From positions 1-64,000 of IMG/VR virus record IMGVR_UViG_3300027759_006101: 64,000 bases of DNA. The stretch is one strand, 5' to 3'. A program made the translations under genes and the position numbers. Positions 10,986-43,823 of the stretch are shown here, in pieces (within the stretch, counting starts at the first letter, position 1; each line of letters opens with the position of its first letter). Below the pieces are notes generated by a model that made no database searches, was not told the origin of the DNA, and saw only the letters and a list, made by a program, of their open reading frames with translations.

Positions 10986-13900
10986 ATGAGTCAAGTAAAG
11001 AGAAAAGGACTTAAGTTCATAATCGACCAGATTGGTAAAGCCAAATATGCTTATAAGAATTTGGTTGGAGATTTGGCTGCCAATAGGGGATTGTTTTTAG
11101 ATTATGAAGCAATAGTCCCTAAAATAAAAGGCTCCACAATTTTTCACGATTACGATTTAGCTGGTAAAACTCTTTCAGGCACAATAACAACTCCTTATCA
11201 AATTTATAATTCAAATGAAAATATTTCTTTTGGATTTCAAGGTGGTCAATATGCAGTTGATCCCAAGATAGCAAGTTTTGGAAACTCAGGAGGATGGACT
11301 CCTCAGTATTATAATCCTCCAACAACTGAAGGATGGGAAGTTCTAGATTATAATGCTTGGTCTACTTTTATCCCACCATATAATGCAGCTGGAAATGCAA
11401 ATACAAGCTTAATTATTTACAACATAAATTCAGAACCTAGTACAGGCTCAAATAGAGTAAATTATAATTTTCCAGTAAGATACACAGGGACAGGATACAC
11501 TAGAGTTAATTTATTTAATTCTGCACGTTGGATTTCTCTTAAGAATACGACAGGCTCTTCAAGTGTCAATCAAGCAAGGATTATTATTCCTAAAAAATAT
11601 TTTGAAAATTGCTTACATTTTGACCCAAGAACAAATACTCCTAAAGATTTTGCAGTTTATTCTCATCAATATTTAATTACTGCTGGATTGGGTGCTACAT
11701 TTAGTTTAGCTGGTTCTATGGCTGGAATAGCATTGACTTTACTCCCGTTTACAATTCAAGAAGCAAGTAGTACAGGAAATACAACAGCAAGAATAAGAGA
11801 TAATTATTTAATTAATGTCAAGACACCAACAACTTGGACAAATAATTACTGGTTGCACTTTGGGTTTTACTGGGAAACATATGATTTATTTTTCCGAGAT
11901 TATATACCAGCATTTTCGACTGGCACAGCAACAACTTTTAATAGCAACAATTTAGATACTGTTTGGTCTATATATCCGAGAAAAACATTCTTCCAAAAAG
12001 ATATAACCAATTACTTGACTTTTGAAAAAACTGGAGTCAATGATAGTAGTATTTATTTATTCTCTTCAAACAAGGGTAATAATAATTTTTATGACGGAGA
12101 TAATCCTTATTCATTAAGTCCTTTTAGATATAAGTATCCTGAGACAATTGGTAAGACTTCATTAGGCGACACAAGTTCATTAAGCAATTTTCATACTATA
12201 AATAAAGATGAATTTCTTCCTTTGGTAATTACGTCTTCTAATGTAATTTCTGGAAATGAATTTGAAAATGGCGATAACGAAATATTTTTGTTTTTCGGAA
12301 AACCAATGCCAATTACTATGGCTCCATCAGACTGGGATAAATTTAACAATTATCCTGAAATAGATGAACAATACAATATTATAGCGAAAGTAATTCTTTC
12401 TTATCCATCATTATCAACTTCTAATACAATCAAGAAAATAACTGATACAACTTACAACTTGAACAATGCTTCAATCATCCATATAGATAGAAGAGCTAAT
12501 AACTTTGCAGTACCATCTTTAGGAGATACAGATTTTATTACCTATTGTCTTCAAGAAGTTTTAGCATTCACCCAGTTCACAAGATCTACAGAATTTGAAG
12601 ATAATTTTAATTCTCTTGCAATTAGACTACTTGTGCCATTTTCAAATTTTAAGTCAAAAGGTTTACAAAACATTTCTAACTTAAATGCAAGTAGCTTACA
12701 GTTATTGCATAATTTATTAAAATATCCCAATACTGATTTACTTCGCTCTAATAATGATTTTATATCTTGCCTTGGTTCAATAACAATTTCAGGCGGAACA
12801 AATGTAATTACTGGCACTAAAACTAGATTCCTAAGTGAAATTTCATCTGGAGATTATATTTATAGTTCAGATGGAACGATTTTATATGGGGTAGTTTCAA
12901 CTGTAATAAGCGATACTTATTTGCTTTTAGATACACAATATAAAAAGAATGTGTCAGACCAAAAATACAAAATAAAAACAAGTATATCTTTATTAGAGCC
13001 AGGTTTTATAGATTTTTCTGTAGATGGCAATAAAACCATATCTGATATAGGTGTAAATCCGCCAACTAAAACATTTTTTGAATATTCAAATGATGGTATT
13101 TTCCTGAATAAAGAACGTCTTAATACTGATACGCAATTTGAAGTTTATCAAAAAAACATTCCGCTCAAAGATTTAAGTAATCACCAAAATTCTGGAAATA
13201 AGCTGGTAAAAGACTACTCTATTTCTGTAAAGTTTAGAAATACTGAGCAAAATTTTACTACAAAAAATCTTTATATAAACTCAAGTAAATTTTTGATATC
13301 AGACCAAGAATATCAACAAAGAATTAATAAAAAATTATCATTGAGTGGATATTACAAAAAAGGTACTAGTCAAGAACAAAAAAATGCTTCGTTAGGAACG
13401 TTAAATAGCATAGAGCTTTATAGACTTTATGGTAATTCTTCAATAATTCCTGACTTACAAATGGGCGAAAATAGAACCATTCTAACAAAACAAGTCGCCC
13501 CAACTGATAATACAAAAATATCTAAAACTGATTATGTCAATAACTTAAAATCGACTAACCCAAATATAACACAGTCAGAAATTGATTCAAATGTAGCAAA
13601 TTATGAATTGACTCAATCCTTTTATTCCACTGACACATCTTCTCTGCCAAGTACATTTAATTCAATTGAAGAGTTAGGTATTACAGTTTCCGATTATTCG
13701 AATGTAGAAAACTACTGGATTTCAAATGTAGAACAAATCATCGGAGATTCAAATACCACAAAATTCTATACTCCCAATAATTTAGAAGATATTAGATCCG
13801 ACTCATTTTTGGTATGTATATCTGGTTTTGGTACAGCTGATTATTCAATTAATTCTATAGAAAATATATTTAAACAACAGATAGAAGTTGATAGCAGTGT

Positions 13901-15683
13901 CGGCATCAATGTATCAACAACAGCAGGTACAAAAAATCTGTCTTATCAAAAAATTGCATTTAAGTTTACTTCTGCAGAAAAACAAGACATTAAGTCTTTC
14001 AAACTTAAACTTGCAAAAACAGCATTATGGCTTAATGAACAAGCTTACATTCAATGTTCAATTTATGATAATTACAATAATTTACCATCAAATAAATTAG
14101 TAACAGGAAGTAAAGTTTTTTACAAAGATATTGAAAATGTTTTAAAAGATATTTACTTTTATATCAATTTTTCGCTTACAGAAAACAGAACATACTGGAT
14201 GGTTTTAGAATCCAATACACTGCAACCTCTTTACGATCAAAATACTTTAGGATTGATAAACGTAAATGACACATCAGTCACAGGTATTTATAATTCTGAA
14301 AATAATACATTTACTGATTTTACTAAATATTTAAAAAATGCAGAGATTGGAATTGGTGGCACATTAGCATCACAAATATCAACTTGGTACTCAATATCCA
14401 GCATTGGGTCAAGTACAAGTATGACTATTGCAAGTACTGGCACAACATTTTCAAATCAAAACTATGTTGTAAAGTATCAGTTTAATATTGCTATCCAAGA
14501 ATCATCTCCTAGCGCTGAAAATATTGCAGTTAATGATGGTTATAATTGGTCATATCAAACAGGAACACCTTACAGAATTTTTTACTCAAACGAAGAAGAA
14601 ATTTATGCTTCGTTCAACAGAGATTATAAAAATACTAACCTGACTATGGCTCAAGCTAATAAGACAAGAGAGACCAATGACTATTTTGTAGATGGATTTT
14701 GGTCCCTAAACAATAAAGATATTTTTACTCCAAGTCTTATAAAAATTTACCCAAGAAGTATTGTTCAAAGACTCACAGGCATTGCAGCAACTGGAACTGT
14801 TGGGACTAATTTGATAAATATAAACAAACAATATTTTGATGATATTGTAATGATAGGACTTGGTATAACTAGCACATCATTATCTGCGGGAACAGCCATA
14901 ACAAATATTATTTATGATGAGTCTCTAGAAAATTACAGAGTTTATCTCTCTAACAACACTACTGGTTCTGCAAATACAACATACTATTTTGGCGATAACA
15001 AAATAAGATTAGTCAAAAGAGCTAACGACATTCATTTGTATTTAAAATACTTTGTGAATGACACCTTGAATACATCTTACATAAAATTAGATAAATCACC
15101 AACTTGGATTTCATATTGGTACAAAAAAGAAGACTGGAATTATAACGACTTAAACTTAAATGAAAACTCTGATTTAATATCTACACACAATAAGTTAGAT
15201 ATTTCCAATTTTTCTGGGTTGGGACAAACAAACTATTTTAATGGAAAAATTATAGGTGACTTTATTTCAAAAGCCTCAATAGGTTCAACTTTTGATTTTA
15301 GAATTACTACTAATGGCGGAGTCAAACTTCTTATAAATGACGAAAGCGCTCCCTATATAAATCAATGGAAAAATAATAGCAATAATTCATTTACAACAGC
15401 ATATTCCGCAACTGGTTCTTCGTTGCCAATTAAACTATCAATTGAGTTTTGCAATCTTGAAAATGAACATTCAATTAAAGCAGAATGGAGACAAACAGGT
15501 ACATCAACCTGGTATGACATAGATTCATCGTTTTACTTTGAGTCAGACAATGCTCCAGTGCTCATAAATGCTAATAAAATAAAGAATCTATCTTATCTAG
15601 TAGTTGGAAAAACTTTTGACGAAATCAATACTCCAACTTTGGGATTTGCTGAAACAGATAGGATCGTTATAAGGAATAAGTAA
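10986..15683 (+). CDS. Large tail/baseplate structural protein with a C-terminal PA14-like domain
   Basis: 1565 aa, S/T/N-rich; fibre-type GSITISGGTNVITGTKTRF repeat; C-terminal FDFRITTNGGVKLLIN...INQW...IKLSIEF...IKAEW fits PA14. Confidence 0.6.
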   Translation: MSQVKRKGLKFIIDQIGKAKYAYKNLVGDLAANRGLFLDYEAIVPKIKGSTIFHDYDLAGKTLSGTITTPYQIYNSNENISFGFQGGQYAVDPKIASFGNSGGWTPQYYNPPTTEGWEVLDYNAWSTFIPPYNAAGNANTSLIIYNINSEPSTGSNRVNYNFPVRYTGTGYTRVNLFNSARWISLKNTTGSSSVNQARIIIPKKYFENCLHFDPRTNTPKDFAVYSHQYLITAGLGATFSLAGSMAGIALTLLPFTIQEASSTGNTTARIRDNYLINVKTPTTWTNNYWLHFGFYWETYDLFFRDYIPAFSTGTATTFNSNNLDTVWSIYPRKTFFQKDITNYLTFEKTGVNDSSIYLFSSNKGNNNFYDGDNPYSLSPFRYKYPETIGKTSLGDTSSLSNFHTINKDEFLPLVITSSNVISGNEFENGDNEIFLFFGKPMPITMAPSDWDKFNNYPEIDEQYNIIAKVILSYPSLSTSNTIKKITDTTYNLNNASIIHIDRRANNFAVPSLGDTDFITYCLQEVLAFTQFTRSTEFEDNFNSLAIRLLVPFSNFKSKGLQNISNLNASSLQLLHNLLKYPNTDLLRSNNDFISCLGSITISGGTNVITGTKTRFLSEISSGDYIYSSDGTILYGVVSTVISDTYLLLDTQYKKNVSDQKYKIKTSISLLEPGFIDFSVDGNKTISDIGVNPPTKTFFEYSNDGIFLNKERLNTDTQFEVYQKNIPLKDLSNHQNSGNKLVKDYSISVKFRNTEQNFTTKNLYINSSKFLISDQEYQQRINKKLSLSGYYKKGTSQEQKNASLGTLNSIELYRLYGNSSIIPDLQMGENRTILTKQVAPTDNTKISKTDYVNNLKSTNPNITQSEIDSNVANYELTQSFYSTDTSSLPSTFNSIEELGITVSDYSNVENYWISNVEQIIGDSNTTKFYTPNNLEDIRSDSFLVCISGFGTADYSINSIENIFKQQIEVDSSVGINVSTTAGTKNLSYQKIAFKFTSAEKQDIKSFKLKLAKTALWLNEQAYIQCSIYDNYNNLPSNKLVTGSKVFYKDIENVLKDIYFYINFSLTENRTYWMVLESNTLQPLYDQNTLGLINVNDTSVTGIYNSENNTFTDFTKYLKNAEIGIGGTLASQISTWYSISSIGSSTSMTIASTGTTFSNQNYVVKYQFNIAIQESSPSAENIAVNDGYNWSYQTGTPYRIFYSNEEEIYASFNRDYKNTNLTMAQANKTRETNDYFVDGFWSLNNKDIFTPSLIKIYPRSIVQRLTGIAATGTVGTNLININKQYFDDIVMIGLGITSTSLSAGTAITNIIYDESLENYRVYLSNNTTGSANTTYYFGDNKIRLVKRANDIHLYLKYFVNDTLNTSYIKLDKSPTWISYWYKKEDWNYNDLNLNENSDLISTHNKLDISNFSGLGQTNYFNGKIIGDFISKASIGSTFDFRITTNGGVKLLINDESAPYINQWKNNSNNSFTTAYSATGSSLPIKLSIEFCNLENEHSIKAEWRQTGTSTWYDIDSSFYFESDNAPVLINANKIKNLSYLVVGKTFDEINTPTLGFAETDRIVIRNK

Positions 15684-22179: not shown

Positions 22180-22763
22180 AAGAATTTATCGATTTTTATA
22201 ATACAGTAAAGTCTAATTACGTGCATATCTTAGAAGTTGATCCTGTAAAATTTATAATCAAAGAAATTACTTGGAAAGATGGCTTACTAATAGATGCCAA
22301 GTCTTTTAGAAAAAAAGATAATATAGTATACCAAAATACAGAGTTTGAAAAAAGAGAAATCTTGAATATAGCTATCTTGGGTGCTTTTGATACTCAGGAT
22401 AGTAAAATGTACTATCCTGAATTTAAAAGTTCATTAATCGATTTATTAGACCACACAATTGTTGAAAAACTTTGGGTCGAGTACCAAAAACATCTTTATC
22501 TTTCTGCAGATGAAGCAAACTTTTACTACATAGCAGCTAAAAAGTATTTCAATCCTAATGATCATGAAACATATCCAGTGCCACCAATAGTAGTTGAAAT
22601 TGACTATATGCTTAGAGGCTTGGTATCATTCAGCAAAGAAGAATTTTCAAATCTTAGTATGAAAGAATTTGAAACAATGCAACTTATTTTAGCTACTAAA
22701 AATGAATCTAAGCAAAAGTCTCTTGCTGATATTGATATTGATCTAGAGAAAGAACTTAAGTAA
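22176..22763 (+). CDS. Tail assembly chaperone-like protein
   Basis: DLLDHTIVEKLW and EFSNLSMKEFE segments resemble chaperone G/T-type motifs; start moved to the ATGA overlap at 22176. Confidence 0.45.
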   Translation: MKEFIDFYNTVKSNYVHILEVDPVKFIIKEITWKDGLLIDAKSFRKKDNIVYQNTEFEKREILNIAILGAFDTQDSKMYYPEFKSSLIDLLDHTIVEKLWVEYQKHLYLSADEANFYYIAAKKYFNPNDHETYPVPPIVVEIDYMLRGLVSFSKEEFSNLSMKEFETMQLILATKNESKQKSLADIDIDLEKELK

Positions 22764-23549
22764 ATCAGAACTTTCTTCTTTACGAATTTTATCAGCCACA
22801 GGAGTTCTATCCCATTGGTGAAAAACGTAATACTCTTCATCATTAGTACTTAGTACTTTCTTGTCATTATATTTGACTTGAACATTGTTTCTCTTGATAG
22901 CTTCTCCAGTTGCGCAAAAATTATCAACGTTTGGATTTGTAATTAATACTTTTGGATTCATAGCATAATATTGAGACAAATACCCCATAACTTGTTGGTC
23001 CTGAACTAAATACTTAGCTACTCTGTTTGTATTAGAGAAAAGCATCAAACAATGATTTACAAAATGCTCAATTTTTCCAGCAAACATTCCACCACTTAGT
23101 ACTAAATTATCAAGATAAGATTCATTGTGTGATCTTAGCAATGGACGATATGAATTTTCCCACATACTATTGCAATCGTTTTCAAGAATTTTCATTCCTT
23201 CTGCAACAAGAAATAAATTGTATTGCGGTCTTGACATCATAAACTCAAATGGGTCTCTTTGAAAAATAACATCTCTCAAATCTGTATTCATAACATATTC
23301 AAATTGGTCTTGTTTGTCAGATAGCCAATCATAAAATGCCATATATCCAGTATATAAGTTTTCTTCAGTTTCAATAATATAATCAAAGTATTTTTTCAAT
23401 TTCTCAATATTGTAAGGGCTAACTGATTTTACAAAAATTGCTTTTTTGAATGACTTAAACTTTGAAATAGACTCTAAAAATAAATCACCATCTCTTGAGT
23501 CTAAGCATTTGTCTCCAAAAGAATAGTTTATAAGTAAATTTTTTTTCAT
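22743..23549 (-). CDS. GT-A-like glycosyltransferase
   Basis: TDLRDVIFQRDPF (DxxD), LSGGMFAG, DQQVMG, HQWDR; start moved to the ATGA overlap at 23549. Confidence 0.65.
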   Translation of the reverse strand: MKKNLLINYSFGDKCLDSRDGDLFLESISKFKSFKKAIFVKSVSPYNIEKLKKYFDYIIETEENLYTGYMAFYDWLSDKQDQFEYVMNTDLRDVIFQRDPFEFMMSRPQYNLFLVAEGMKILENDCNSMWENSYRPLLRSHNESYLDNLVLSGGMFAGKIEHFVNHCLMLFSNTNRVAKYLVQDQQVMGYLSQYYAMNPKVLITNPNVDNFCATGEAIKRNNVQVKYNDKKVLSTNDEEYYVFHQWDRTPVADKIRKEESSDLLKFFL

Positions 23550-24379
23550 AAGTTTGTCTCCAATTTGATTTTTTTGTAACACTCTTCTATACCAGAAATG
23601 AGTCCTTTGAGGGATATATTCATTTTGTGCAAATCATACTTGCCTATATATGAATTCTTAAGCTCAGTGTTATCAAGGTCTATTTCAACTTTATGTTTGT
23701 CTAAATTGTTGATAATCTGTGCAATATCATATAGGGTGTACTTTTGTTGATAACTGCAATTACAATCTTTTTGAGGATTTTCTGATTCTATGTAATGTTT
23801 GATAATTTGCATAAAATCATCAAAAAACATAAAGTCCATATATCTATTGTCAAAAACACTAATATTTTCATTATTGATATATCTTAAGATGTTGCCTTTA
23901 ATCATCCGTGTCTTGAGTTCATTGTAATTGAAGATATTGAATATTCTAATGTTGTAAAACTTATCACAAAAATATCCTGATTTTGCAATTAAGTTTTTGC
24001 TAATTCCATATGGATCAAGTGGAAGTGAAGATAAATAATTTGAACTTTCATTCATTTGAAAAGCTCTGTCTAATTCAGCTCCAGAACCAAAAGATATATA
24101 TTTACCATAATGTTTTTCATTTCTTAGAATATTGAAATGCATAGAAAGATTAGTGTGGACATATTCTGGTAAATCTTCTGATAATCTGCTGCCACCTTTT
24201 ATCGCAGTGTGAAATACTACGTCAAAATATTTATCTTTGAAAAAATTATCAACTTGTTCAGCATTTGTAACTTCTAAATTTTGTCTTGTAGTTAAGGTCA
24301 AGTTGTAATCGTTCTTTAAGTTTTCTGCAATGTTTGAAGCAATATATCCATTAGCCCCTGTAATCAAAATAGATTTCAT
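23546..24379 (-). CDS. NAD-dependent epimerase/reductase (extended SDR)
   Basis: ITGANGYIA, YGISK; start at the TAATG overlap. Confidence 0.85.
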   Translation of the reverse strand: MKSILITGANGYIASNIAENLKNDYNLTLTTRQNLEVTNAEQVDNFFKDKYFDVVFHTAIKGGSRLSEDLPEYVHTNLSMHFNILRNEKHYGKYISFGSGAELDRAFQMNESSNYLSSLPLDPYGISKNLIAKSGYFCDKFYNIRIFNIFNYNELKTRMIKGNILRYINNENISVFDNRYMDFMFFDDFMQIIKHYIESENPQKDCNCSYQQKYTLYDIAQIINNLDKHKVEIDLDNTELKNSYIGKYDLHKMNISLKGLISGIEECYKKIKLETNL

Positions 24380-26106
24380 TACCAGTTTTCCGACCAAGAA
24401 ATATTTTCAAGCAAGCCTGGAATAAAGTTTCCATTTTCATCTAAACGAGCAATTACTTTAGGTTCATGAACTTCGTCAGGATGAGTCATAACTTCACAAA
24501 TAGCAGGACCGTCTATTTGAAAAAATTGTTGTAACTTTTCATCTATTTCATCATTGTTATAAACTCTAATGAACGGAAGATTGTATACATCTGCAACTTT
24601 TTCATAATCAGGGAATGTAACTCCACTGTTCCTATCAGCTGCAACTAATCTACCATTGAAGAAAATATTTTGTGTAATCTTCATAGAGAGATATCCGTCG
24701 TTGTTAATAAGTAATATCTTTAATGGCAAATTATTGTGTCTAACTGTCTGAAGCTCGTGGACATTCAAGTGAAGACTTCCATCACCTTCCATACAAAGAA
24801 TATTATGGTGTGTCGCAGCTCCCACAGCACATGGCAATCCATATCCAAGCGGAGCACCACCAGTATTTGTTATTAATCTTTGCCCATCTTTAAGCTTACA
24901 TACTTGCATAGTTACAACATTTGCAGAACCATCACTGGTTACAATATGATAATCGGATGGAATGTGATTGTTGAGTTTTTCAACTAATGCATACACAGAA
25001 GCTACGTCTTTCATATTCCTGTGTCTGTCTAAAACTACAGGTGCCTTGAAAGTATCGCAATGCTTTAGCCATGAATTAGATGCTGGTGTGATATTTTTTG
25101 AATTTAATTCTTTTAAAAATTCTTTTGCATCAGCAAGAACTTTAATATTTGGGAAAATAGTTGGCTTGTCAAGTTCCGCTGCGTCAATATCTACAACAAT
25201 TCTTTTTGCATTTTTAGCAAAGTTTTTAAAATTGTATCCAATTTGTCTTACATACAATCTACTGCCAATAGAAAGCATCAAGTCACATTCATTTAGTAAC
25301 TTATTTGCACACATTTGAGCATGTGTCCCAAATCTTCCATAGTATGATTGGTAAGATTCATTTACTAAATCATTGCCATTTACAGCTGTAATTACTGGTA
25401 TTTGAGTTTTTTCTAAGAGAGCGAATAGTTCGTCTACTCCTCCACTCAACCTAATTCCATTACCTAATACAAACAATGGTTTTTGAGCAGAATTAATAGC
25501 TTCTACAACCCTGTCAATCAATTCTGAATCAATCTTCAATGGTTCGGGTATATCAAAACCCTCAAGCTCTTCAGGTTCAATTTGCACAGTTTGTACATCC
25601 AAAGGAATATCTACCCAAACTGGCCCTGGTCTCCCAGATGTAGCTAAATAACACGCCTTTTCAAGTTCATACCTAATTCTTAAAGGATCGTTGACTTGGA
25701 CAGCATATTTTGTCATCGTTTTGACAGTTTCAATAATATTGAATTCTTGGTCACCTAATTGCCTTAAGGGTAAACCTGTAAAATTAGTACTCATAGGTCT
25801 ATTGACTTGCCCACTAAGATTCAACACAGGAATAGAATCTAGCCAGCTGCATAAAGTACCTGTCAGGGCATTTGTGCCTCCAGGGCCAGATGTCAATAAA
25901 CAAACTCCAAGTTTGTTGTTCATTCTTGCGTAGCCTTCAGCAGCTAATGCAGAAGCTTGCTCGTGATGGTTTGCAATAAAATTTACACCTTCTGCATTTC
26001 CCAAAGAATCAAGCAAGTGCATACAACCCGCACCACATAATGTAAAAATTGTGTCTACATTATAAGTGTCTCTTAAAAACTTAATTACATAATCAGATAA
26101 CTTCAT
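24379..26106 (-). CDS. ThDP-dependent enzyme, acetolactate synthase-like/YerE-like carboligase
   Basis: HHEQASALAAEGYAR, TSGPGGTN, RPGPVWVDIP, EGDGSLHLN...NNDGY. Confidence 0.9.
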   Translation of the reverse strand: MKLSDYVIKFLRDTYNVDTIFTLCGAGCMHLLDSLGNAEGVNFIANHHEQASALAAEGYARMNNKLGVCLLTSGPGGTNALTGTLCSWLDSIPVLNLSGQVNRPMSTNFTGLPLRQLGDQEFNIIETVKTMTKYAVQVNDPLRIRYELEKACYLATSGRPGPVWVDIPLDVQTVQIEPEELEGFDIPEPLKIDSELIDRVVEAINSAQKPLFVLGNGIRLSGGVDELFALLEKTQIPVITAVNGNDLVNESYQSYYGRFGTHAQMCANKLLNECDLMLSIGSRLYVRQIGYNFKNFAKNAKRIVVDIDAAELDKPTIFPNIKVLADAKEFLKELNSKNITPASNSWLKHCDTFKAPVVLDRHRNMKDVASVYALVEKLNNHIPSDYHIVTSDGSANVVTMQVCKLKDGQRLITNTGGAPLGYGLPCAVGAATHHNILCMEGDGSLHLNVHELQTVRHNNLPLKILLINNDGYLSMKITQNIFFNGRLVAADRNSGVTFPDYEKVADVYNLPFIRVYNNDEIDEKLQQFFQIDGPAICEVMTHPDEVHEPKVIARLDENGNFIPGLLENISWSENW

Positions 26107-27127
26107 AAACGTTTTCCAGTGCCTCTTTAATTATAGAATAATCTTCAATTTTTTGAATTAATGGTTGGTTATCTTTAATTAGCACCATGTTAACACAGCC
26201 AGTATTTTTCTTATCTGACATGACACATTCCATAAGGCTTTCATAATCAAACCATTCTTGATTAAAAGATACTGTATTTTCTAGAAGTTTTTTGACAATA
26301 TTTAATGTTGCAGAATAATCTTTGTAATTGTAGTTATAAAATAGTTCACTTACCCTCAAGGCTACAAGACATCCAATTGCCACTGCATATCCATGCGATA
26401 ACTTGTACTTTGAGGTAATTTCTAAAGCATGACCAAATGTATGACCAAAGTTCAGAAATTTACGTTCTTTTTTATCAAACTCATCAATCTCTAAAACAGA
26501 AATTTTATAATTAAGACTTTCATAAATGTGATGCAGAACATTTTTATTTTCAGAAATCAAATCAATGACTTTTGATTCTTGAATTTTATTTCTTAAGATA
26601 TCAAACTTCATTAATTCGCCTAAACCACTACAAAAGTTTTCTTTACTTAAGCCATCAAGCCATTCTTCACAAATAAGAATTTCACACGGAGGATAAAATG
26701 TACCAAGAATATTTTTTCTTGACCCATAATTGATAGAAGTTTTACCACCAATACAACTATCAATTTGAGAAAGCAATGTTGTTGGAACTAAATAATATTC
26801 AATGCCTCTACAATAAACAGAAGCACAAAAGCCCACTGCATCTTGTAAAACTCCACCACCAATAACTACAAGCTTAGTTTGCGTATTGACTTTTTTTTCA
26901 GCAAATTTATCAAATATTTTTTCTAGACCACGCCATGATTTTAAGTCTTCATTTGTGTCTGTAACTATGAGATCACCTAATCCAAATTCAGGAAAACAGT
27001 GAGCAACATTTTTGTCAACTACTGCAAGATGATAATCTTCTCCAATGAGTTTATATATTTCGCTCAAGCTTACAAAATTTACAGAATAATCTTTGATTTT
27101 TGATTTGACATTTATTTGGCTGTACAT
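26093..27127 (-). CDS. 3-dehydroquinate synthase-like sugar-phosphate cyclase
   Basis: GGGVLQD, VPTTLLSQIDSCIGGKT, KNILGTF, LNFGHTFGHALE, HGYAVAIG. Confidence 0.9.
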   Translation of the reverse strand: MYSQINVKSKIKDYSVNFVSLSEIYKLIGEDYHLAVVDKNVAHCFPEFGLGDLIVTDTNEDLKSWRGLEKIFDKFAEKKVNTQTKLVVIGGGVLQDAVGFCASVYCRGIEYYLVPTTLLSQIDSCIGGKTSINYGSRKNILGTFYPPCEILICEEWLDGLSKENFCSGLGELMKFDILRNKIQESKVIDLISENKNVLHHIYESLNYKISVLEIDEFDKKERKFLNFGHTFGHALEITSKYKLSHGYAVAIGCLVALRVSELFYNYNYKDYSATLNIVKKLLENTVSFNQEWFDYESLMECVMSDKKNTGCVNMVLIKDNQPLIQKIEDYSIIKEALENVYEVI

Positions 27128-27750
27128 GAATAACCACCATCTATAACTATATTTTGTCCTGATATATATGAATTTTGCACTGTCAAAAAATATACTAAAT
27201 CTGCAACTTCTTTTGTATATCCCAATCTACCAAGTGGAATTTTACTTCTTAAATTCTTCAAATCTTCTTCTGTATTATTTTGAAAAGTCATATCAGTGAT
27301 GAAAAATCCAGGAGACACAGTATTTGCCAAAATATTATAAGTACCATATTCAGCAGTTATAGCTTTTGTAAGAGAGTGTAAGGCATTTTTACTAGCACTA
27401 TATGAGGATCTTCCAGGTTTTGCATAATCTACCCATACGCTTCCAATATTTACAACCCTGCCATAATTTTGTTTTTTCATATAAGGTAAGCAAAGTTTGA
27501 ATAATCTCAAAGGTGAGAAATAATTTACTGTCATCATTTCTTCATATTTCTCACCTTCAAATATAGAGTCTATTATGTTAATTCCAGCATTATTTATCAA
27601 GATATCAATTTTGTCTGGAATAAAAGAAAAGGCTTGAGATAAATCAAGTTCTTCACGAGTTGGAGCAATAACTTCGTGACCATTTTTTTTGAAAATTTCA
27701 GAAATATCACTGCCTATGCCTCTTGACCCACCAGTGATAAGTATTTTCAT
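27112..27750 (-). CDS. Classical SDR oxidoreductase (FabG-like)
   Basis: TGGSRGIG, INNAG, YSASK, NTVSPG, IVIDGG. Confidence 0.9.
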   Translation of the reverse strand: MKILITGGSRGIGSDISEIFKKNGHEVIAPTREELDLSQAFSFIPDKIDILINNAGINIIDSIFEGEKYEEMMTVNYFSPLRLFKLCLPYMKKQNYGRVVNIGSVWVDYAKPGRSSYSASKNALHSLTKAITAEYGTYNILANTVSPGFFITDMTFQNNTEEDLKNLRSKIPLGRLGYTKEVADLVYFLTVQNSYISGQNIVIDGGYSCTAK

Positions 27751-28547
27751 AGTTCTGAAGCAGCTTGATTGATCCTAAATTGTATCATTTTAATTCTATT
27801 TTCATCTTGCAGTGAAAGTTTCTGATACAACTCCATTTTGTTAGTAAGCCATTCATATTCAAACATTTGAGCTTTAAAAAGAGCTCTTGATAAATTTTTC
27901 AACGCAACAGATGGATCAAAAATTGCATATCTTGTTTCAAATTTGTCTAAAAGTTTTTGTGAATGTAGTTTTTTCAAAAAATCTAAAGACTCAATAGATA
28001 CAGCTCCGCCAATACAAGCCTTGGCACCTAATTTCTTTGTTCTTTCAAAAACGTCATGAGCAATTTGGTAAACTTCTTCAGAATTTACAAAAGTTCTATC
28101 CTTTTTCATAGAAGATACTAAGTCAACTCTTCCCAATGTAACACCATATAATGATTCTGCAGCTTTTTGAGAAAGAATTTTATCAATGTTTGCAACAGCT
28201 GTTTGTGTTTCTATATTTACGTTCAATTGCAATGAATTTACTACTTCTGATGGCAGATTATTATGAATGGCATTTATGAATTTAGTTAGCCCAAATTCAG
28301 ACTCAACCATTGGAGCCACTAAACCCTTAACTCCAATTACCATTGAATCTTTAATATCTCTAATTGCTTCTGGACCACCAATTTTTAATGTGACTTTTGT
28401 ATTAGATTGATTGCAAATTTCTTTCAACCTTAAGACTTCGTTAAAAGTTGCACCCTCATCTTCAAAACTTGTTTTAATCCCAACTAGCCCATAGTTTTCA
28501 ACTAAATCTGTAAGGATATTTACGCACTTGAATTCTCTGTTGTTCAT
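27747..28547 (-). CDS. HpcH/HpaI aldolase/citrate lyase-family protein
   Basis: GIKTSFEDEG, VAPMVES, VNIET, VTLGRVDL. Confidence 0.8.
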   Translation of the reverse strand: MNNREFKCVNILTDLVENYGLVGIKTSFEDEGATFNEVLRLKEICNQSNTKVTLKIGGPEAIRDIKDSMVIGVKGLVAPMVESEFGLTKFINAIHNNLPSEVVNSLQLNVNIETQTAVANIDKILSQKAAESLYGVTLGRVDLVSSMKKDRTFVNSEEVYQIAHDVFERTKKLGAKACIGGAVSIESLDFLKKLHSQKLLDKFETRYAIFDPSVALKNLSRALFKAQMFEYEWLTNKMELYQKLSLQDENRIKMIQFRINQAASEL

Positions 28548-28556
28548 AGTTTTATT

Positions 28557-29507
28557 TTACCAAATGAATTTATTTTTGTAATAATTGACTATGTTTAAAA
28601 TCTCATTGTCAAAATTTACTTGTGGAGACCAACCTAAATTTTTAAGTTTAGAATCATCAATTGCATATCTGACATCTTGCCCTGGTCTCATAACGTCATA
28701 AGAGATATAATCATCATAGTTTACAGAAGATTCAAAGTATGCATCTATAATTTTTTTAATTGTATCAATATTCGATTGTTCAAAACCTCCGGCTACATTG
28801 TAAATCTCATTAGACTTACCTTTCTCTATAATTGCAATTATTGCTGATGCAGTATCACTTGCATGTAACCAATTACGTATAGGAGTTCCGTGATTGTGTA
28901 ATGGGATTTTTCTTTTCAAAGTTAAAAACTTACAAGCTTTAGGGATAAGTTTTTCAACATATTGACCAATACCGTAATTGTTAGTTGGTCTGACAATATT
29001 GTAATTTAGATCGAAAGTTCTAGCCCAAGCCACAATTAACATATCTGCAGAAGCTTTAGTTGCAGAGTAAGGATTGCTTGGTTTCAATAAGTCAGTTTCT
29101 TTATGACTCCCATCAACCACATCTCCGTATACTTCGTCAGTGCTGAAGTGAATAAATCTTGGTATTACATATCCTTCTGTTTTGTAATTTTTAAGAAGCT
29201 CTAAAATATTGTGAACACCTGTAATGTTTGAGTGTAAAAAAACATCACTTTTACGTATTGAGTTATCTACGTGAGTTTCTGCAGCAGTATTTATAAAAAC
29301 ATCACAATCAACTAATCTTTTTATATCGCAAATATCAGTTTTCTCAAATTTGAATTTTGGATTACAGAAAAAATCATCCAAAACACTTACATCAGAAGCA
29401 TAAGTACAGCTATCGATGCCATAAACATACCAGCCTTTGTCTAAACAAGCCTTAGTAATATATCTGCCTATAAAACCTAAGCATCCAGTTATATAAACGA
29501 TTTTCAT
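28557..29507 (-). CDS. rmlB: NDP(dTDP)-glucose 4,6-dehydratase
   Basis: TGCLGFIG, AAETHVDNSI, STDEVYG, PYSATK, RPTNNYG, EKLIP, RPGQD.RYA. Confidence 0.9.
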   Translation of the reverse strand: MKIVYITGCLGFIGRYITKACLDKGWYVYGIDSCTYASDVSVLDDFFCNPKFKFEKTDICDIKRLVDCDVFINTAAETHVDNSIRKSDVFLHSNITGVHNILELLKNYKTEGYVIPRFIHFSTDEVYGDVVDGSHKETDLLKPSNPYSATKASADMLIVAWARTFDLNYNIVRPTNNYGIGQYVEKLIPKACKFLTLKRKIPLHNHGTPIRNWLHASDTASAIIAIIEKGKSNEIYNVAGGFEQSNIDTIKKIIDAYFESSVNYDDYISYDVMRPGQDVRYAIDDSKLKNLGWSPQVNFDNEILNIVNYYKNKFIW

Positions 29508-35549: not shown

Positions 35550-35556
35550 TGTATTG

Positions 35557-36162
35557 ATGGAAAAATACTTACCTGAAGACCTAATTGCATTTGAAACAGA
35601 TATTGCAAATTGTTTCAATGAAGGCATTATCAAAGCACCCGTTCATTTATATGATGGCAATGAAGAACAAATCATAAAAGTTTTTCAAGATGTATCAGAA
35701 GATGATTGGGTTTTTTGCACTTGGCGTTCACATTATCAATGTTTGTTGAAAGGTGTGCCAAAAGAACAAGTGAAAACCGATATTTTAAATGGTAAATCTA
35801 TAACTTTATGCTATCCTGAACACAAAGTTTATTCTTCTGCTATTGTAACAGGAAGTATTCCAATTGCTACAGGGGTAGCTTTAGATATAAAGCGTAAAAA
35901 TCAAAATAACAAAGTATGGTGTTTTGTTGGAGATATGTCTTCTGAAACTGGTGTTTTTTTTGAAAACTGGAAATACGCAGTTAATCACGACTTACCAATT
36001 ACTTACGTAATTGAAGACAACAATAAATCAGTTTGTTCAGAAACTCGTAAGGTGTGGAATTGTGATAAGTTATTTTTTGAAAACGAAAATAGAAAAATAA
36101 TTTACTACTCATACACTTCTAAATATCCTCACGCTGGGGCTGGAAAAAGGATTCAATTTTAA
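35557..36162 (+). CDS. Minimal ThDP dehydrogenase E1-alpha-like subunit
   Basis: APVHL, TWRSHY, SAIVTG, GDMSSETG...EDNN; only ~200 aa. Confidence 0.85.
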   Translation: MEKYLPEDLIAFETDIANCFNEGIIKAPVHLYDGNEEQIIKVFQDVSEDDWVFCTWRSHYQCLLKGVPKEQVKTDILNGKSITLCYPEHKVYSSAIVTGSIPIATGVALDIKRKNQNNKVWCFVGDMSSETGVFFENWKYAVNHDLPITYVIEDNNKSVCSETRKVWNCDKLFFENENRKIIYYSYTSKYPHAGAGKRIQF

Positions 36163-36698
36163 TGAAATACTTTGATGAACTTAAAAGATCAATGGAATGG
36201 CTTGCTGAAAAAGAAGATACTTTATTTTTAGGCCAAGCTGTTGAGTATCCAGGCACAGCACTTACAAATACTATTGCAAATGTAGACAAAAGTAAGTTGC
36301 TAGAAATGCCAGTAAACGAAGAAATGCAAATGGGTATGACTTTAGGTATGGCGTTAAATGGTAGTGTTCCTGTATCTTTTTTCCCAAGATGGAATTTTCT
36401 TATATTAGCAGCCAATCAACTAGTAAATCACATCGATAAAATAAATATAATGTCAGATGGTGGATATAAGCCAAAAATCATTATCAGAACAGCTATAGGT
36501 TCACAAAGACCATTGCATCCTCAACACCAACATATTTCCGATTTTACTGCAGGTTTTAAGGCTCTTTGTGATTATGTTGATATAATTAGACTGGAAGAAC
36601 CACATCAAGTTTTTAATGCTTATAAATATGCCTATGAAAGAACAGATAATAGGCCAACATTATTGGTAGAATGGGGAGATTTTTACAGTGAAAAATAA
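36162..36698 (+). CDS. Minimal E1-beta/transketolase pyrimidine-binding subunit, no C-terminal domain
   Basis: FLGQAV, LEMPVNEEMQMG, NQLVN, HPQH; 178 aa. Confidence 0.85.
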   Translation: MKYFDELKRSMEWLAEKEDTLFLGQAVEYPGTALTNTIANVDKSKLLEMPVNEEMQMGMTLGMALNGSVPVSFFPRWNFLILAANQLVNHIDKINIMSDGGYKPKIIIRTAIGSQRPLHPQHQHISDFTAGFKALCDYVDIIRLEEPHQVFNAYKYAYERTDNRPTLLVEWGDFYSEK

Positions 36699-37863
36699 CT
36701 TATCTCATCCTCTTATGAATGACAATATTGATAGAGAAGATATTAATTCTGTAATTGATTTCTTGTCAGGTGAAAATATCCCCAAGCTTACAAATGGACC
36801 TAAAGTTGTTGAATTTGAAAACGCTTGGGGCAACTGGCTTGGAACTAAATATAATCTTTTTGTAAATTCAGGAGCTTCAGCAAATGAGTTAACTATGCTG
36901 GCAATTGCTCATATGATAGGTGAGGGAGAAATTATTGTCCCACCTCTTACTTGGATTTCTGACATTTCTTCAGTCTTATTCGCAGGGCATAAATTAGTTT
37001 TTGTGGATGTAAATTTCACAAATCTTTCTTTTGATATAGACAAGCTTAAAGCAGCAATTACACCAAACACTAAAGCAATTTTCTTAACTCATGTTCTTGG
37101 AATTAACGCTATCACAAAAGAACTCTTAGAAATTTGTGAAAAAAATAATATTCTGCTAATCGAAGATGTATGCGAATCTCACGGTACAACTTATCAAGGA
37201 TGCAAAGTTGGTAATTTTGGATTCGCAAGTAATTTTAGTTTTTATTTTGCACATCATATGTCAACAATTGAAGGTGGCATGATATCCACTAACAATTTTG
37301 AATTTTATCAAGTTTGTCGTGCATTAAGATCTCATGGTATGGTTAGAGAAATGACAAGTTCAGCTATGAAAAACTCTGTCATTGAAGCTAATCCAGACTT
37401 AAATCCTGATTTTATTTTCTTGCGTCCAGCTCATAATTTTAGAAGCACTGAAATCAATGCTGTCATTGGCTTATCACAGTTACCAAAGCTTGATGATAAA
37501 AATCAAGAAAGAATAGATAATTTTGATTTATTTATATCAAATTTAAATTCTGAAAAGTATCATATCGCAATTAACACTGAAGGCAATTGTAACTATGCTT
37601 TTATAGTGATTCTGAAAGAGCCAAATTTTGATAAACGAAATGCTCTGGAAAATAAACTTGCTGAAAATGGAATTGAGTTTAGAAGAGGACTGTCTGGTGG
37701 TGGCAATCAAATGAGACAGCCTTTTTTCAAATCTATTTATCAAGACTTTTCTGATTATCCAGTTATTGAGCATGTGCATAATTTTTCTTGGTATATTGGA
37801 AACTACCCAGGTCTGGAAAAAGAAAAGATTAATTTTTTACTTGAGATTTTAAATAGTGACTAA
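36688..37863 (+). CDS. DegT/DnrJ-family PMP-dependent 3-dehydratase (ColD-type)
   Basis: NSGASAN, IEDVCESHG, SFYFAHHMSTIEGG (His at the Schiff-base Lys position); no Fe-S Cys insertion. Confidence 0.85.
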   Translation: MKNNLSHPLMNDNIDREDINSVIDFLSGENIPKLTNGPKVVEFENAWGNWLGTKYNLFVNSGASANELTMLAIAHMIGEGEIIVPPLTWISDISSVLFAGHKLVFVDVNFTNLSFDIDKLKAAITPNTKAIFLTHVLGINAITKELLEICEKNNILLIEDVCESHGTTYQGCKVGNFGFASNFSFYFAHHMSTIEGGMISTNNFEFYQVCRALRSHGMVREMTSSAMKNSVIEANPDLNPDFIFLRPAHNFRSTEINAVIGLSQLPKLDDKNQERIDNFDLFISNLNSEKYHIAINTEGNCNYAFIVILKEPNFDKRNALENKLAENGIEFRRGLSGGGNQMRQPFFKSIYQDFSDYPVIEHVHNFSWYIGNYPGLEKEKINFLLEILNSD

Positions 37864-37865
37864 AA

Positions 37866-38636
37866 ATGAAAAAAAATTACAGTAATATTAAGATATTAGT
37901 CATAGGCGATTCTTGCACAGATGTTTTTGTGTATGGTAATGCCTTTAGATTAGCACCCGAAGGCCCAGTACCCGTATTCAATCCGGAATCTGAAAAACAG
38001 AATGGGGGAATGGCTTTAAATGTCAAGCATAATATCGAAGCAATTGGGGCAAATGCAACACTCTTGACTCAAAATGAAGACATATTCAAAACAAGATATG
38101 TTGACTCAAGAACAAATAGTCTTTTACTACGTGTAGATACTAATGACACAGCCACTAGAATAAGTAGAGATGTTATTCAAAGCATCACTAATAACACATA
38201 TTTAGATGTTGTATATGATGCAATCATTATTAGTGATTATTGCAAAGGTTTTTTGACAGAAGAAGATATTGATGAAATTTCACTTAATAATTTTAACATT
38301 TTTTTAGATACAAAAAAAATACTAGGTGATTGGTGCAAATACGTTACTTTTATAAAAATTAACTTTTCAGAGTTTGAGCGAACCAAACATACAATTGATA
38401 AATTAGATATTTCTGAAAAACTTATAATAACTAAGTCTGACGATGGTTGTGATTATCAAGGTGAAAATTTTCCAGTAGAAAAAGTGAATATCAAAGATGT
38501 TTCCGGAGCTGGTGATACATTTATTTCTGGGCTTGTATGTGAATATGTCAATTCTTATTCTGTAAAAAATGCGATATTGTTTGCTCAAGAATGTGCCACT
38601 AAAGTTGTTCAAAAAAAGGGAGTTTGTACTATATGA
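37866..38636 (+). CDS. PfkB-family sugar kinase, HldE/RfaE kinase domain only
   Basis: ILVIGD, LAPEGPVPV, GGMALNV, ISDYCKG, KDVSGAGDTF. Confidence 0.85.
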   Translation: MKKNYSNIKILVIGDSCTDVFVYGNAFRLAPEGPVPVFNPESEKQNGGMALNVKHNIEAIGANATLLTQNEDIFKTRYVDSRTNSLLLRVDTNDTATRISRDVIQSITNNTYLDVVYDAIIISDYCKGFLTEEDIDEISLNNFNIFLDTKKILGDWCKYVTFIKINFSEFERTKHTIDKLDISEKLIITKSDDGCDYQGENFPVEKVNIKDVSGAGDTFISGLVCEYVNSYSVKNAILFAQECATKVVQKKGVCTI

Positions 38637-39795: not shown

Positions 39796-39804
39796 GGAGA
39801 AAAT

Positions 39805-40395: not shown

Positions 40396-40430
40396 AAAAA
40401 GAGGAGTAAAAAATACTCCTCTTTTTTTTT
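40394..40430. terminator. Bidirectional Rho-independent terminator between the island and MCP
   Basis: A7-GAGGAGTA-AAAAA-TACTCCTC-T9. Confidence 0.9.
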
Positions 40431-40445
40431 GTGACTAGTTTAGAA

Positions 40446-41300: not shown

Positions 41301-41332
41301 TTGATTTTTTCTCCTTTAATTTACGCTACTGA

Positions 41333-43816: not shown

Positions 43817-43823
43817 TTTATCT

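What the first reader, a model, noticed from the sequence alone, without database searches (positions are those of the whole stretch)
24379..28547. Aldolase - SDR - DHQS-like cyclase - ThDP module: candidate carbocyclic sugar pathway
Four translationally coupled genes. Established: HpcH aldolases add pyruvate to aldehydes giving 3-deoxy-2-ulosonates, and DHQS-superfamily enzymes cyclise such sugar phosphates into carbocycles. No other shikimate genes are nearby, and the cyclase has HGYAV in place of the usual HGEAV. Inference: the module makes a cyclitol or carbocyclic monosaccharide for transfer to a glycan. Bacterial LPS precedent for pairing a carbocyclic sugar with a branched 3,6-dideoxy sugar is caryose plus caryophyllose. 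This is an analogy, not an assignment.
Basis: partly seen in the sequence, partly recalled or inferred. Interest (0 to 1): 0.8.

Follow-up and report, generated by a model that had tools for sequence, protein, structure and literature searches.

The report
Phage pathway for a long-branched deoxysugar
A jumbo phage carries a tightly packed seven-gene set that most likely builds a rare sugar with a long side chain (the caryophyllose type known from Mycobacterium marinum), not a ring-shaped cyclitol, and it points to an unrecognised job for a relative of a classic amino-acid enzyme.

Summary
The four genes are real, overlap by 4, 16 and 14 nt, and belong to the stated families. They are the core of a seven-gene minus-strand block (22743-29507): NDP-glucose 4,6-dehydratase, HpcH-type aldolase, FabG-like reductase, DHQS-like enzyme, ThDP enzyme, a second reductase, and a probable glycosyltransferase.

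The ThDP enzyme is not acetolactate synthase. Its best solved relatives are the YerE-like sugar-branching carboligases JanthE and PpYerE.

The same cassette, usually with a sugar 3-dehydratase, occurs in at least 46 of 80 viral loci and in many bacterial phyla. The M. marinum caryophyllose cluster has this make-up, including a DHQS-family gene (MMAR_2329).

The slot beside SDR-DHQS is filled by three unrelated enzymes that form 2-keto-3-deoxy acids. The product is consumed by a ThDP decarboxylase or, elsewhere, a KdsB-like CMP-transferase. Both need the 2-keto acid that cyclisation would destroy.

Best reading: aldolase makes a DAHP-like acid; the DHQS-like enzyme removes its phosphate without ring closure; the SDR reduces the ketone; the ThDP enzyme grafts the chain onto a 4-keto-deoxyhexose. 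The carbocycle idea is not supported. The branched-sugar assignment is firm; the DHQS role is inferred.

The parts
28557..29507 (-). NDP-glucose 4,6-dehydratase (RmlB-like). Supplies the NDP-4-keto-6-deoxyhexose acceptor.
   Evidence: TIGR01181 dTDP-glucose 4,6-dehydratase 297 bits; the CDP-glucose model scores only 67. Best PDB match 2hun, E 1.5e-71. First gene of the conserved block in viral loci.
27747..28547 (-). Divergent HpcH/HpaI-type class II pyruvate aldolase. Proposed to make a 3-deoxy-2-ulosonate phosphate from pyruvate and an aldose phosphate.
   Evidence: Pfam PF03328, 1.1e-10. No PDB sequence hit. AlphaFold model pLDDT 95.5, with HpcH/HpaI aldolases as top PDB fold matches at TM about 0.6. 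Invariant E113 and D142 lie in NIET and GRVDL motifs. The slot is taken by HMGL-like or NeuB-like enzymes in other loci.
27112..27750 (-). Short classical SDR (FabG-like ketoreductase), the obligate partner of the DHQS-like gene.
   Evidence: adh_short and adh_short_C2, 1e-37. Motifs TGGSRGIG, NNAG, YSASK. An SDR lies directly upstream of the DHQS-like gene in 51 of 70 non-AroB loci. Best PDB matches are FabG ketoreductases.
26093..27127 (-). DHQS-superfamily enzyme of the TIGR04425 kind. Proposed NAD+/metal-dependent eliminator of the terminal phosphate from a DAHP-like acid, without productive ring closure.
   Evidence: TIGR04425 299 bits (cut-off 400) against aroB 244 (cut-off 305). All DHQS ligand and catalytic residues invariant. 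Clade separate from canonical aroK-linked AroB.
24379..26106 (-). YerE-like ThDP-dependent carboligase. Decarboxylates the 2-keto acid and adds the acyl group to C4 of the NDP-4-keto sugar.
   Evidence: Best PDB matches JanthE 8rph (381 bits) and PpYerE 5ahk (236); ALS 216 or less. 8rph identified as JanthE in PMC12188165. HEQ glutamate and GDG...NN motif.
23546..24397 (-). Extended-SDR reductase in the YerF position. Proposed to reduce the C1' ketone of the new branch.
   Evidence: PF01370 Epimerase, 1.5e-19. Follows the ThDP gene in nearly all viral and many bacterial loci. Role by analogy with YerF/ErwF (PMC9306805).
22743..23582 (-). Probable GT-A-fold glycosyltransferase, last gene of the block. 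The true start is probably 23549.
   Evidence: No Pfam hit. ESM Atlas feature and structure neighbours are phage proteins near GT_PLOD, GT8, GT2 and GT29 families: a lead only. Conserved after the reductase in the closest viral loci.
36688..37863 (+). ColD/E1-type PLP/PMP sugar 3-dehydratase, an accessory gene. Would turn the acceptor into a 4-keto-3,6-dideoxyhexose.
   Evidence: DegT family, 2.6e-68. RfbH model 187 bits, below cut-off. The motif FSFYFAHHMSTIEGG has His where aminotransferases carry the Schiff-base Lys (the rule is from my own knowledge of ColD/E1). True RfbH genes flank the cassette in other viral and bacterial loci.

Best explanation
The block encodes synthesis and transfer of an acyl-branched (C-branched) deoxyhexose of the caryophyllose type.

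Proposed steps. Steps 1, 5 and 6 rest on family assignment and published precedent. Steps 2-4 are inferred.
1. The 4,6-dehydratase, helped by the ColD/E1-type 3-dehydratase at 36688-37863, makes an NDP-4-keto-6-deoxy- or 3,6-dideoxy-hexose from a host NDP-glucose.
2. The HpcH-type aldolase joins pyruvate to an aldose phosphate, most simply erythrose 4-phosphate. This gives a DAHP-like 3-deoxy-2-heptulosonate 7-phosphate.
3. The DHQS-like enzyme performs the first half of the DHQS reaction: NAD+-dependent oxidation, beta-elimination of phosphate, then re-reduction. The result is a 7-deoxy-6-keto acid rather than a carbocycle.
4. The adjacent SDR reduces that ketone, giving a 3,7-dideoxyheptulosonate.
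5. The YerE-like ThDP enzyme decarboxylates this acid and adds the six-carbon acyl unit to C4 of the keto-sugar.
6. The 283-aa reductase reduces the branch ketone, and the last gene, a GT-A-like protein, transfers the sugar.

The target of glycosylation is unknown. It could be virion proteins, since the island lies between tail-fibre-like genes and genes I take to be head genes (portal, a protease-like domain), or it could be the host envelope.
For: - ThDP enzyme: closest solved relatives are the YerE-like enzymes JanthE (381 bits) and PpYerE (236 bits), ahead of every ALS at 216 or less (PMC12188165, PMC12247030).
- Published scheme of aldolase + YerE-like enzyme + reductase + deoxy-keto-sugar genes for erwiniose, caryophyllose and gastriose, with enzymes tested in vitro (PMC9306805).
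- M. marinum caryophyllose cluster has the same make-up: MMAR_2329 DHQS-family protein, 2331 aldolase/citrate-lyase family, 2332 ThDP, 2333 GT2, 2334 glucose-1-P cytidylyltransferase, 2335 RfbH, 2336 CDP-glucose 4,6-dehydratase. The housekeeping aroB is elsewhere (MMAR_2177).
- The caryophyllose side chain, 1,3,4,5-tetrahydroxyhexyl with a terminal methyl, equals a decarboxylated, reduced 3,7-dideoxyheptulosonate. That is DAHP without its 7-O-phosphate.
- All DHQS residues for phosphate, carboxylate, metal and hydroxyl binding are invariant in the window protein and in 69 relatives.
- Among 70 non-AroB loci: aldolase in 54, ThDP in 46 (45 of them with an aldolase), KdsB-like CMP-transferase in 10, SDR directly upstream in 51.
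- HpcH, HMGL/DmpG-like and NeuB-family enzymes replace one another in the same slot.
- The block order is conserved in at least 46 of 80 viral loci.
Against: - No enzyme of this cassette has been assayed, and the role of MMAR_2329 has not been tested in any paper I could search.
- With every DHQS catalytic residue intact, the default expectation is that a DAHP-like substrate would cyclise. From my own knowledge of the DHQS literature, the late steps can even proceed without the enzyme, so the SDR would have to intercept the intermediate.
- The window protein scores below the TIGR04425 cut-off (299 against 400).
- The aldehyde partner, the chain length and the nucleotide on the acceptor sugar are all inferred.
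- I could not confirm on sequence that MMAR_2329, or the unannotated MMAR_2330, is an orthologue of the phage genes.
- A PfkB/HldE-like kinase and a second (split E1) ThDP system in the island have no role in this scheme.
Confidence: 0.6

Rival explanations
1. The aldolase product is cyclised by the DHQS-like enzyme into a dehydroquinate-like carbocycle. The SDR and the ThDP enzyme tailor it, and it is transferred to a glycan as a carbocyclic sugar.
For: All DHQS catalytic and DAHP-binding residues are intact, so ring closure is chemically the default. Curators describe TIGR04425 as a putative cyclizing phospholyase. Caryose biosynthesis is unknown (PMC9092360), so no precedent excludes it. 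A PfkB-type kinase lies in the island.
Against: - Ring closure consumes the C2 ketone. Neither a ThDP decarboxylase nor a KdsB-like CMP-transferase, the two enzymes that accompany the trio in 56 of 70 loci, would then have a substrate.
- A tertiary carbinol cannot serve as a glycosyl donor (general chemistry).
- No dehydroquinase, shikimate/quinate dehydrogenase or cyclitol nucleotidyltransferase is among the recurrent neighbours.
- No carbocycle is reported in the M. marinum lipooligosaccharide made by the equivalent cluster.
Confidence: 0.12
2. Same end product as the best explanation, in a different order. The DHQS-like enzyme and the SDR act before the aldolase, turning erythrose 4-phosphate (or another aldose phosphate) into a terminal-deoxy aldehyde such as 4-deoxytetrose. 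The aldolase then joins that to pyruvate.
For: Steitz et al. draw the caryophyllose donor as the aldol product of pyruvate and a free aldehyde (PMC9306805). In the erwiniose cluster a dedicated enzyme (ErwJ) supplies the aldehyde. Gene order alone does not fix reaction order.
Against: The two residues that bind the DAHP carboxylate in DHQS (K208 and R222 here) are invariant in all 69 family members, which is unexpected if the substrate had no carboxylate. A tetrose phosphate cannot form the pyranose that DHQS-type active sites hold (my own knowledge).
Confidence: 0.15
3. Ordinary auxiliary metabolic genes: a canonical AroB and an acetolactate synthase that boost host aromatic and branched-chain amino-acid synthesis. 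This is how the equivalent prasinovirus genes have been read.
For: Generic annotation as 3-dehydroquinate synthase. ALS models hit at 1e-100. Literature reading for prasinoviruses (PMC5371798).
Against: All aroB and ALS models score below their cut-offs. There is no ALS small subunit and no other shikimate or ilv gene. The genes overlap with sugar-nucleotide enzymes. The ThDP enzyme is nearer to YerE-like enzymes. The DHQS-like clade is separate from aroK-linked AroB.
Confidence: 0.03

Closest known systems
Caryophyllose biosynthetic genes of the Mycobacterium marinum LOS locus (MMAR_2329-2336)
   Same: Same gene families: DHQS-family protein, HpcH/citrate-lyase-family aldolase, YerE-like ThDP enzyme, glycosyltransferase, NDP-hexose 4,6-dehydratase and 3-dehydratase. 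Mutants in MMAR_2331, 2332 and 2333 lose caryophyllose (PMC9306805, PMC5706390).
   Different: The phage dehydratase is of the dTDP-glucose (RmlB) type, not CDP-glucose, and there is no nucleotidyltransferase. The 3-dehydratase is ColD-like and short, not a full RfbH. The transferase is a GT-A-like phage protein, not the GT2 LosA type. Orthology to MMAR_2329 was not checked on sequence, and the product stereochemistry is unknown.
YerE / ErwE / JanthE: YerE-like ThDP carboligases of branched-sugar pathways (yersiniose, erwiniose)
   Same: Three-domain ThDP enzyme with its best PDB similarity to JanthE and PpYerE. Sits next to a reductase in the YerF position and to deoxy-keto-sugar genes. An aldolase supplies the donor, as in the erwiniose cluster.
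   Different: Canonical GDG motif rather than JanthE's CDG. The aldolase is HpcH-type, not ErwI (DmpG-type), and there is no acetaldehyde dehydrogenase. An SDR/DHQS-like pair is present that the published scheme does not discuss.
3-Dehydroquinate synthase (AroB) and other sugar-phosphate cyclases (DOIS, EEVS, DDGS)
   Same: Same fold and Pfam domains. All metal, phosphate, carboxylate and hydroxyl ligands of DHQS are retained, so the substrate is probably a DAHP-like acid.
   Different: Scores below the aroB cut-off. Forms a separate clade with invariant Q95, S124, C125, S131 and P146, and lacks the Glu of the HGE motif. Always paired with an SDR and with enzymes that need the 2-keto acid intact. 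Ring closure is therefore doubtful.
NCBIfam TIGR04425, 'AroB-related putative sugar phosphate phospholyase (cyclizing)'
   Same: Best-scoring model. Bacterial cassette members pass its cut-off (L039, 436 bits).
   Different: The phage protein scores 299, below the cut-off of 400. The family itself is a 'hypothetical equivalog' with no tested function.

Membership tests
Canonical 3-dehydroquinate synthase (AroB, shikimate pathway) | Score at or above the curated equivalog cut-off (TIGR01357, 305 bits) | tested here: not met
   244.3 bits.
Canonical 3-dehydroquinate synthase (AroB, shikimate pathway) | Metal ligands and DAHP-binding residues present | tested here: met
   R107, D123, K129, N139, E171, K174, K208, R222, N226, H229, H233, H245 and K307 align with the DHQS residues in the alignment to H. 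pylori DHQS 3clh. They are invariant in the family, except the K174 position (K in 60, H in 9 of the 69). The residue roles are from my own knowledge of the A. nidulans DHQS structure.
Canonical 3-dehydroquinate synthase (AroB, shikimate pathway) | Shikimate-pathway genomic context (for example aroK next door) | tested here: not met
   No shikimate gene among the 30 flanking ORFs annotated. True aroK-aroB loci (SAR86) form a separate clade with 100% support.
TIGR04425 AroB-related putative phospholyase | Score at or above the curated cut-off (400 bits) | tested here: not met
   299 bits. It is nevertheless the best model, and bacterial cassette homologues pass (436 bits).
YerE-like ThDP carboligase | Three ThDP-enzyme domains, catalytic Glu, GDG-X-NN cofactor motif | tested here: met
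   PF02776, PF00205 and PF02775. HEQ and GDGS...NNDGY motifs.
YerE-like ThDP carboligase | Closer to characterised YerE-like enzymes than to acetolactate synthases | tested here: met
   JanthE 381 bits and PpYerE 236 bits against the best ALS at 216. All NCBIfam ALS models score below cut-off.
YerE-like ThDP carboligase | Carboligation of a 2-keto acid onto the ketone of an NDP-4-keto sugar | not testable with these tools
   Needs an enzyme assay.
HpcH/HpaI class II pyruvate aldolase | Family profile match and TIM-barrel HpcH fold | tested here: met
   PF03328 at 41.6 bits, above the cut-off of 25. Foldseek ranks 1-20 are HpcH/HpaI-family structures (aldolases, plus the SbnG citrate synthase at rank 10), E 5e-10, TM about 0.6.
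HpcH/HpaI class II pyruvate aldolase | Metal-binding Glu/Asp pair and catalytic Arg | tested here: inconclusive
   Invariant E113 (NIET) and D142 (GRVDL) lie where the family's ligands are expected. The Arg70 equivalent was not identified and no residue-level superposition was made.
Acyl-branched sugar gene cluster (scheme of Steitz et al. 2022) | Aldolase, YerE-like enzyme, NAD(P)H reductase, genes for an NDP-4-keto-deoxyhexose and a glycosyltransferase, all clustered | tested here: met
   All present in 22743-29507, plus the dehydratase at 36688-37863. The glycosyltransferase assignment is a lead only.
   The recurrent partners are a ThDP decarboxylase or a KdsB-like CMP-transferase, both of which need the 2-keto acid. 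No cyclitol nucleotidyltransferase was found.

The most novel reading that the evidence does not exclude
The TIGR04425-type DHQS relatives, together with their SDR partner, are a non-cyclising 'terminal deoxygenation' device. They strip the omega-phosphate from DAHP-like 3-deoxy-2-ulosonates by DHQS chemistry and reduce the resulting methyl ketone. This would supply the terminal methyl of caryophyllose-type branches and of CMP-activated deoxy-ulosonic acids. It would be a new reaction outcome for the DHQS superfamily, spread widely by phages and probably by prasinoviruses.
Probability: 0.45. Interest if true: 0.75.

Novelty: new variant of a known kind. Interest (0 to 1): 0.62.

Why it matters
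1. It corrects a likely mis-annotation. 'Dehydroquinate synthase' and 'acetolactate synthase' genes in phages, and by extension in prasinoviruses where they are read as amino-acid genes, are better read as parts of a rare-sugar pathway.
2. It offers a concrete, testable candidate for an unexplained step in caryophyllose-type sugar biosynthesis: the origin of the terminal-deoxy polyhydroxy chain. That would be a new outcome for DHQS chemistry.
3. It shows that long-branched deoxysugars, known from a handful of bacterial glycolipids, are encoded by many uncultivated large phages. This bears on virion or host-surface glycosylation and on phage-host recognition.
4. YerE-like enzymes are sought as biocatalysts for chiral tertiary alcohols. 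These cassettes would name their natural donors.

Tried and rejected
- Nucleotide and protein searches of GenBank phages and of PLSDB plasmids found only canonical aroB at about 30% identity, so they gave no annotated counterpart of the cassette.
- PDB sequence search with the aldolase found nothing. Its fold had to be predicted.
- The supplement of Steitz et al. is not held as text, so I could not see whether they noted the DHQS-family gene. I did not find an annotation for MMAR_2330.
- Literature searches combining phage, dehydroquinate synthase, acetolactate synthase and glycosylation returned only the prasinovirus papers.
- I considered whether 'HGYAV' marks a changed mechanism. The Tyr is clade-specific and the position is merely non-acidic across the family, so it is a family marker and not evidence for or against cyclisation.
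- Rejected: a phosphonate pathway (PEP mutase plus phosphonopyruvate decarboxylase), because the ThDP enzyme is a full-length three-domain YerE-like protein and the barrel protein matches HpcH aldolases.
- Rejected: ordinary amino-acid auxiliary genes (see rivals).
- PHROGs gave no function for most flanking structural ORFs. No tRNA genes are in the window.
- One call was a mistaken reference and returned an error.

Full report
**1. What is there**

The window is part of a phage. It has a large terminase (57846-59957), a portal (48118-50499) and a tail-fibre-like protein (10986-15683). It matches a 358,269-bp IMG/VR contig at 100% identity, so this is a jumbo phage (L084). No phage record in the GenBank/INPHARED collection shows nucleotide similarity to the 22-32 kb region holding the block.

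Between about 22.7 and 40.4 kb lies an island of sugar-modifying genes. The four genes of the finding exist as described. They overlap by 4, 16 and 14 nt.

They are the middle of a seven-gene co-directional block:
- an RmlB-like NDP-glucose 4,6-dehydratase (28557-29507);
- the HpcH-type aldolase;
- a short FabG-like SDR;
- the DHQS-like protein;
- the ThDP enzyme;
- an extended-SDR reductase (23546-24397);
- a 279-aa protein with no Pfam match, whose ESM Atlas neighbours are GT-A-fold glycosyltransferases (a lead only).

**2. Checking each family**

The aldolase assignment was the weakest: Pfam E-value 1e-10 and no PDB sequence hit. A model built on 17 homologues is confident (pLDDT 95.5). Its first 20 PDB fold matches are all HpcH/HpaI-family structures, nearly all class II pyruvate aldolases.

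The SDR has the classical cofactor and catalytic motifs. It resembles ketoreductases in general.

The DHQS-like protein is nearer to NCBIfam TIGR04425 ('AroB-related putative sugar phosphate phospholyase', 299 bits) than to aroB (244 bits). It is below both cut-offs.

The ThDP enzyme hits ALS models, all below their cut-offs. Its best solved relatives are 8rph (381 bits) and 5ahk (236 bits), ahead of every ALS at 216 or less. 8rph is JanthE and 5ahk is listed next to it; both are YerE-like enzymes that add acyl groups to ketones. It carries the catalytic Glu and a canonical GDG...NN motif.

**3. Comparative context**

Exact-protein look-ups and a viral-contig scan show the order dehydratase-HpcH-SDR-DHQS-ThDP-reductase in at least 46 of 80 viral loci. 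A true RfbH-type 3-dehydratase is often beside it.

A scan of one genome per species returned 80 loci. Seven of these, all SAR86, are ordinary aroK-aroB pairs and serve as an outgroup.

Among 70 non-AroB loci, three of which are metagenomic phage contigs:
- an SDR lies directly upstream of the DHQS-like gene in 51;
- a YerE-like ThDP gene lies within 9 kb in 46;
- 45 of those 46 also have an aldolase, either HpcH-type or more often a 536-aa HMGL/DmpG-like protein;
- RfbH, glucose-1-P cytidylyltransferase, a CDP-glucose-dehydratase-sized epimerase-family gene, a polyprenyl-phosphate-type GT2 and GtrA recur.

A second viral layout puts a NeuB-family synthase where HpcH sits (L149). Three unrelated enzymes whose shared chemistry is making 3-deoxy-2-ulosonic acids therefore occupy one slot.

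A separate set of loci pairs aldolase, SDR and DHQS-like genes with a KdsB-like cytidylyltransferase. These come from SAR11, Leptospira perolatii, Omnitrophota, Selenomonas and a Bacillota MAG. In one case a polysialyltransferase-like gene is also present.

On a tree, the phage cassette proteins form one well-supported clade. A Terrimicrobiaceae MAG contig nests inside it. Canonical AroB forms a well-supported group of its own.

**4. Link to known biochemistry**

Steitz et al. (PMC9306805) showed the following scheme for erwiniose, caryophyllose and gastriose:
- an aldolase makes a 4-hydroxy-2-oxo acid;
- a YerE-like enzyme decarboxylates it and adds it to C4 of CDP-4-keto-3,6-dideoxyglucose;
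- a YerF-like reductase finishes the branch.

ErwE refuses pyruvate and needs the aldol product.

Caryophyllose is 3,6-dideoxy-4-C-(D-altro-1,3,4,5-tetrahydroxyhexyl)-D-xylo-hexose (PMC5706390). Its branch is therefore a decarboxylated, reduced 2-oxo-4,5,6-trihydroxyheptanoate. That is DAHP lacking the 7-O-phosphate.

The expression table in the supplement of PMC12395582 lists, inside the M. marinum LOS locus:
[quoted passage not shown] - MMAR_2332, ThDP-binding protein;
- MMAR_2333, GT2;
- MMAR_2334, glucose-1-P cytidylyltransferase;
- MMAR_2335, RfbH;
- MMAR_2336, CDP-glucose 4,6-dehydratase.

The housekeeping aroB is MMAR_2177. This is the same cassette. I found no paper that assigns a role to MMAR_2329.

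**5. What the DHQS-like enzyme probably does**

In the alignment to H. pylori DHQS and across 69 relatives, the following DHQS residues are conserved; all are invariant except the K174 position, which is K in 60 and H in 9 of the 69:
- phosphate binders: K129, N139, N226, H233, K307, R107;
- carboxylate binders: K208, R222;
- metal ligands: E171, H229, H245;
- hydroxyl binder: D123.

The residue roles come from my own knowledge of the A. nidulans structure. The substrate is therefore very likely a DAHP-like acid, which places the enzyme after the aldolase.

The family differs from AroB at invariant Q95, S124, C125, S131 and P146. It also lacks the Glu of the HGE motif.

Sequence alone cannot say whether the ring closes. 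Context can. Both kinds of consumer found next to the trio, a ThDP decarboxylase and a CMP-transferase, act on the 2-keto-3-deoxy acid. A DHQS aldol closure consumes that ketone and leaves a tertiary carbinol that cannot be a glycosyl donor.

I therefore propose that the enzyme stops after oxidation, phosphate elimination and re-reduction, and that the partner SDR reduces the exposed 6-ketone. This would account for the terminal methyl of caryophyllose-type chains. It is an inference. The known tendency of the DHQS intermediate to cyclise on its own (my knowledge) counts against it.

**6. The acceptor in the phage**

The dehydratase is of the dTDP-glucose type, and no nucleotidyltransferase was found in the island.

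The DegT-family protein at 36688-37863 has His where aminotransferases have the Schiff-base Lys. This is the signature of ColD/E1-type 3-dehydratases (my knowledge). The acceptor may therefore be a 4-keto-3,6-dideoxyhexose, as in the bacterial systems.

**7. Verdict**

- The interpretation as a carbocyclic-sugar pathway is not supported.
- The module is best read as a phage version of an acyl-branched, caryophyllose-type sugar pathway (about 0.85 for that level).
- The specific non-cyclising role of the DHQS-like/SDR pair stands at about 0.45-0.5.

The kind of system is known from bacteria. The phage setting, the dTDP-type and ColD-like acceptor genes, and the unassigned DHQS/SDR step make it a new variant, with a testable new enzymology question.

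Noticed in passing
window 35554-36698 (+): A split E1 alpha/beta ThDP pair (202 and 178 aa). It resembles the 'alpha-keto acid dehydrogenase 2' enzymes that add acetyl branches to keto-sugars in antibiotic pathways (PMC12247030). The island may therefore hold a second, independent C-branching system. The pair is conserved with the cassette in the closest viral loci.
   Followed up: partly
window 37866-40395 (+): An HldE-kinase-like PfkB protein, a PhyH-family dioxygenase and a methyltransferase close the sugar island. None has a role in the proposed pathway.
   Followed up: no
literature: prasinoviruses (OtV, OlV, MpV); not in the window: Prasinoviruses are reported to carry '3-dehydroquinate synthase' and 'acetolactate synthase'. 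OlV1 also has an 'enoyl-ACP reductase', and MpV-1 has 'acetaldehyde dehydrogenase plus oxovalerate aldolase'. These are read as amino-acid or stress genes (PMC5371798, PMC6851583). The set mirrors the SDR/DHQS/YerE-like and ErwI/ErwJ logic, so they may be branched-sugar genes. Not checked on sequences.
   Followed up: no
L149:4447-5565 and the related viral loci L140-L163: A second viral cassette layout (dehydratase, NeuB-family synthase, ThDP, SDR, DHQS-like, reductase, RfbH) replaces the HpcH aldolase with a PEP-dependent synthase. Its DHQS-like proteins form their own clade.
   Followed up: partly
L005, L007, L026, L038, L061, L064, L065, L072, L081: In SAR11, Leptospira perolatii, Omnitrophota, Selenomonas and others, the SDR/DHQS-like pair sits with a KdsB-like CMP-transferase. 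Other neighbours are a SIS isomerase, GFO and 2-hydroxyacid dehydrogenases and often an aldolase, plus a polysialyltransferase-like gene in L005. This looks like an undescribed CMP-activated deoxy-ulosonic acid pathway.
   Followed up: partly
L004 (Terrimicrobiaceae MAG contig JBMOHW010000076.1): This 11.6-kb contig carries the phage-type cassette and nests inside the viral clade on the DHQS-like tree. It is probably a phage or prophage contig binned into a bacterial MAG, and it may hint at a Verrucomicrobiota host for that subgroup.
   Followed up: no
window 43855-47994 (-) and 40001-46000: A 1379-aa protein whose N-terminal ~200 residues match a phage head-maturation-protease family. The region has a raised G+C content (0.38-0.43 against about 0.32 elsewhere).
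   Followed up: no
L002 3559-5079 and L003 3051-4571: Close relatives of the window carry a B12-binding radical SAM gene in the sugar island, in the stretch where the window instead has two GT1-like genes and three epimerase-family genes. The accessory tailoring genes are exchanged between otherwise syntenic phages.
   Followed up: no
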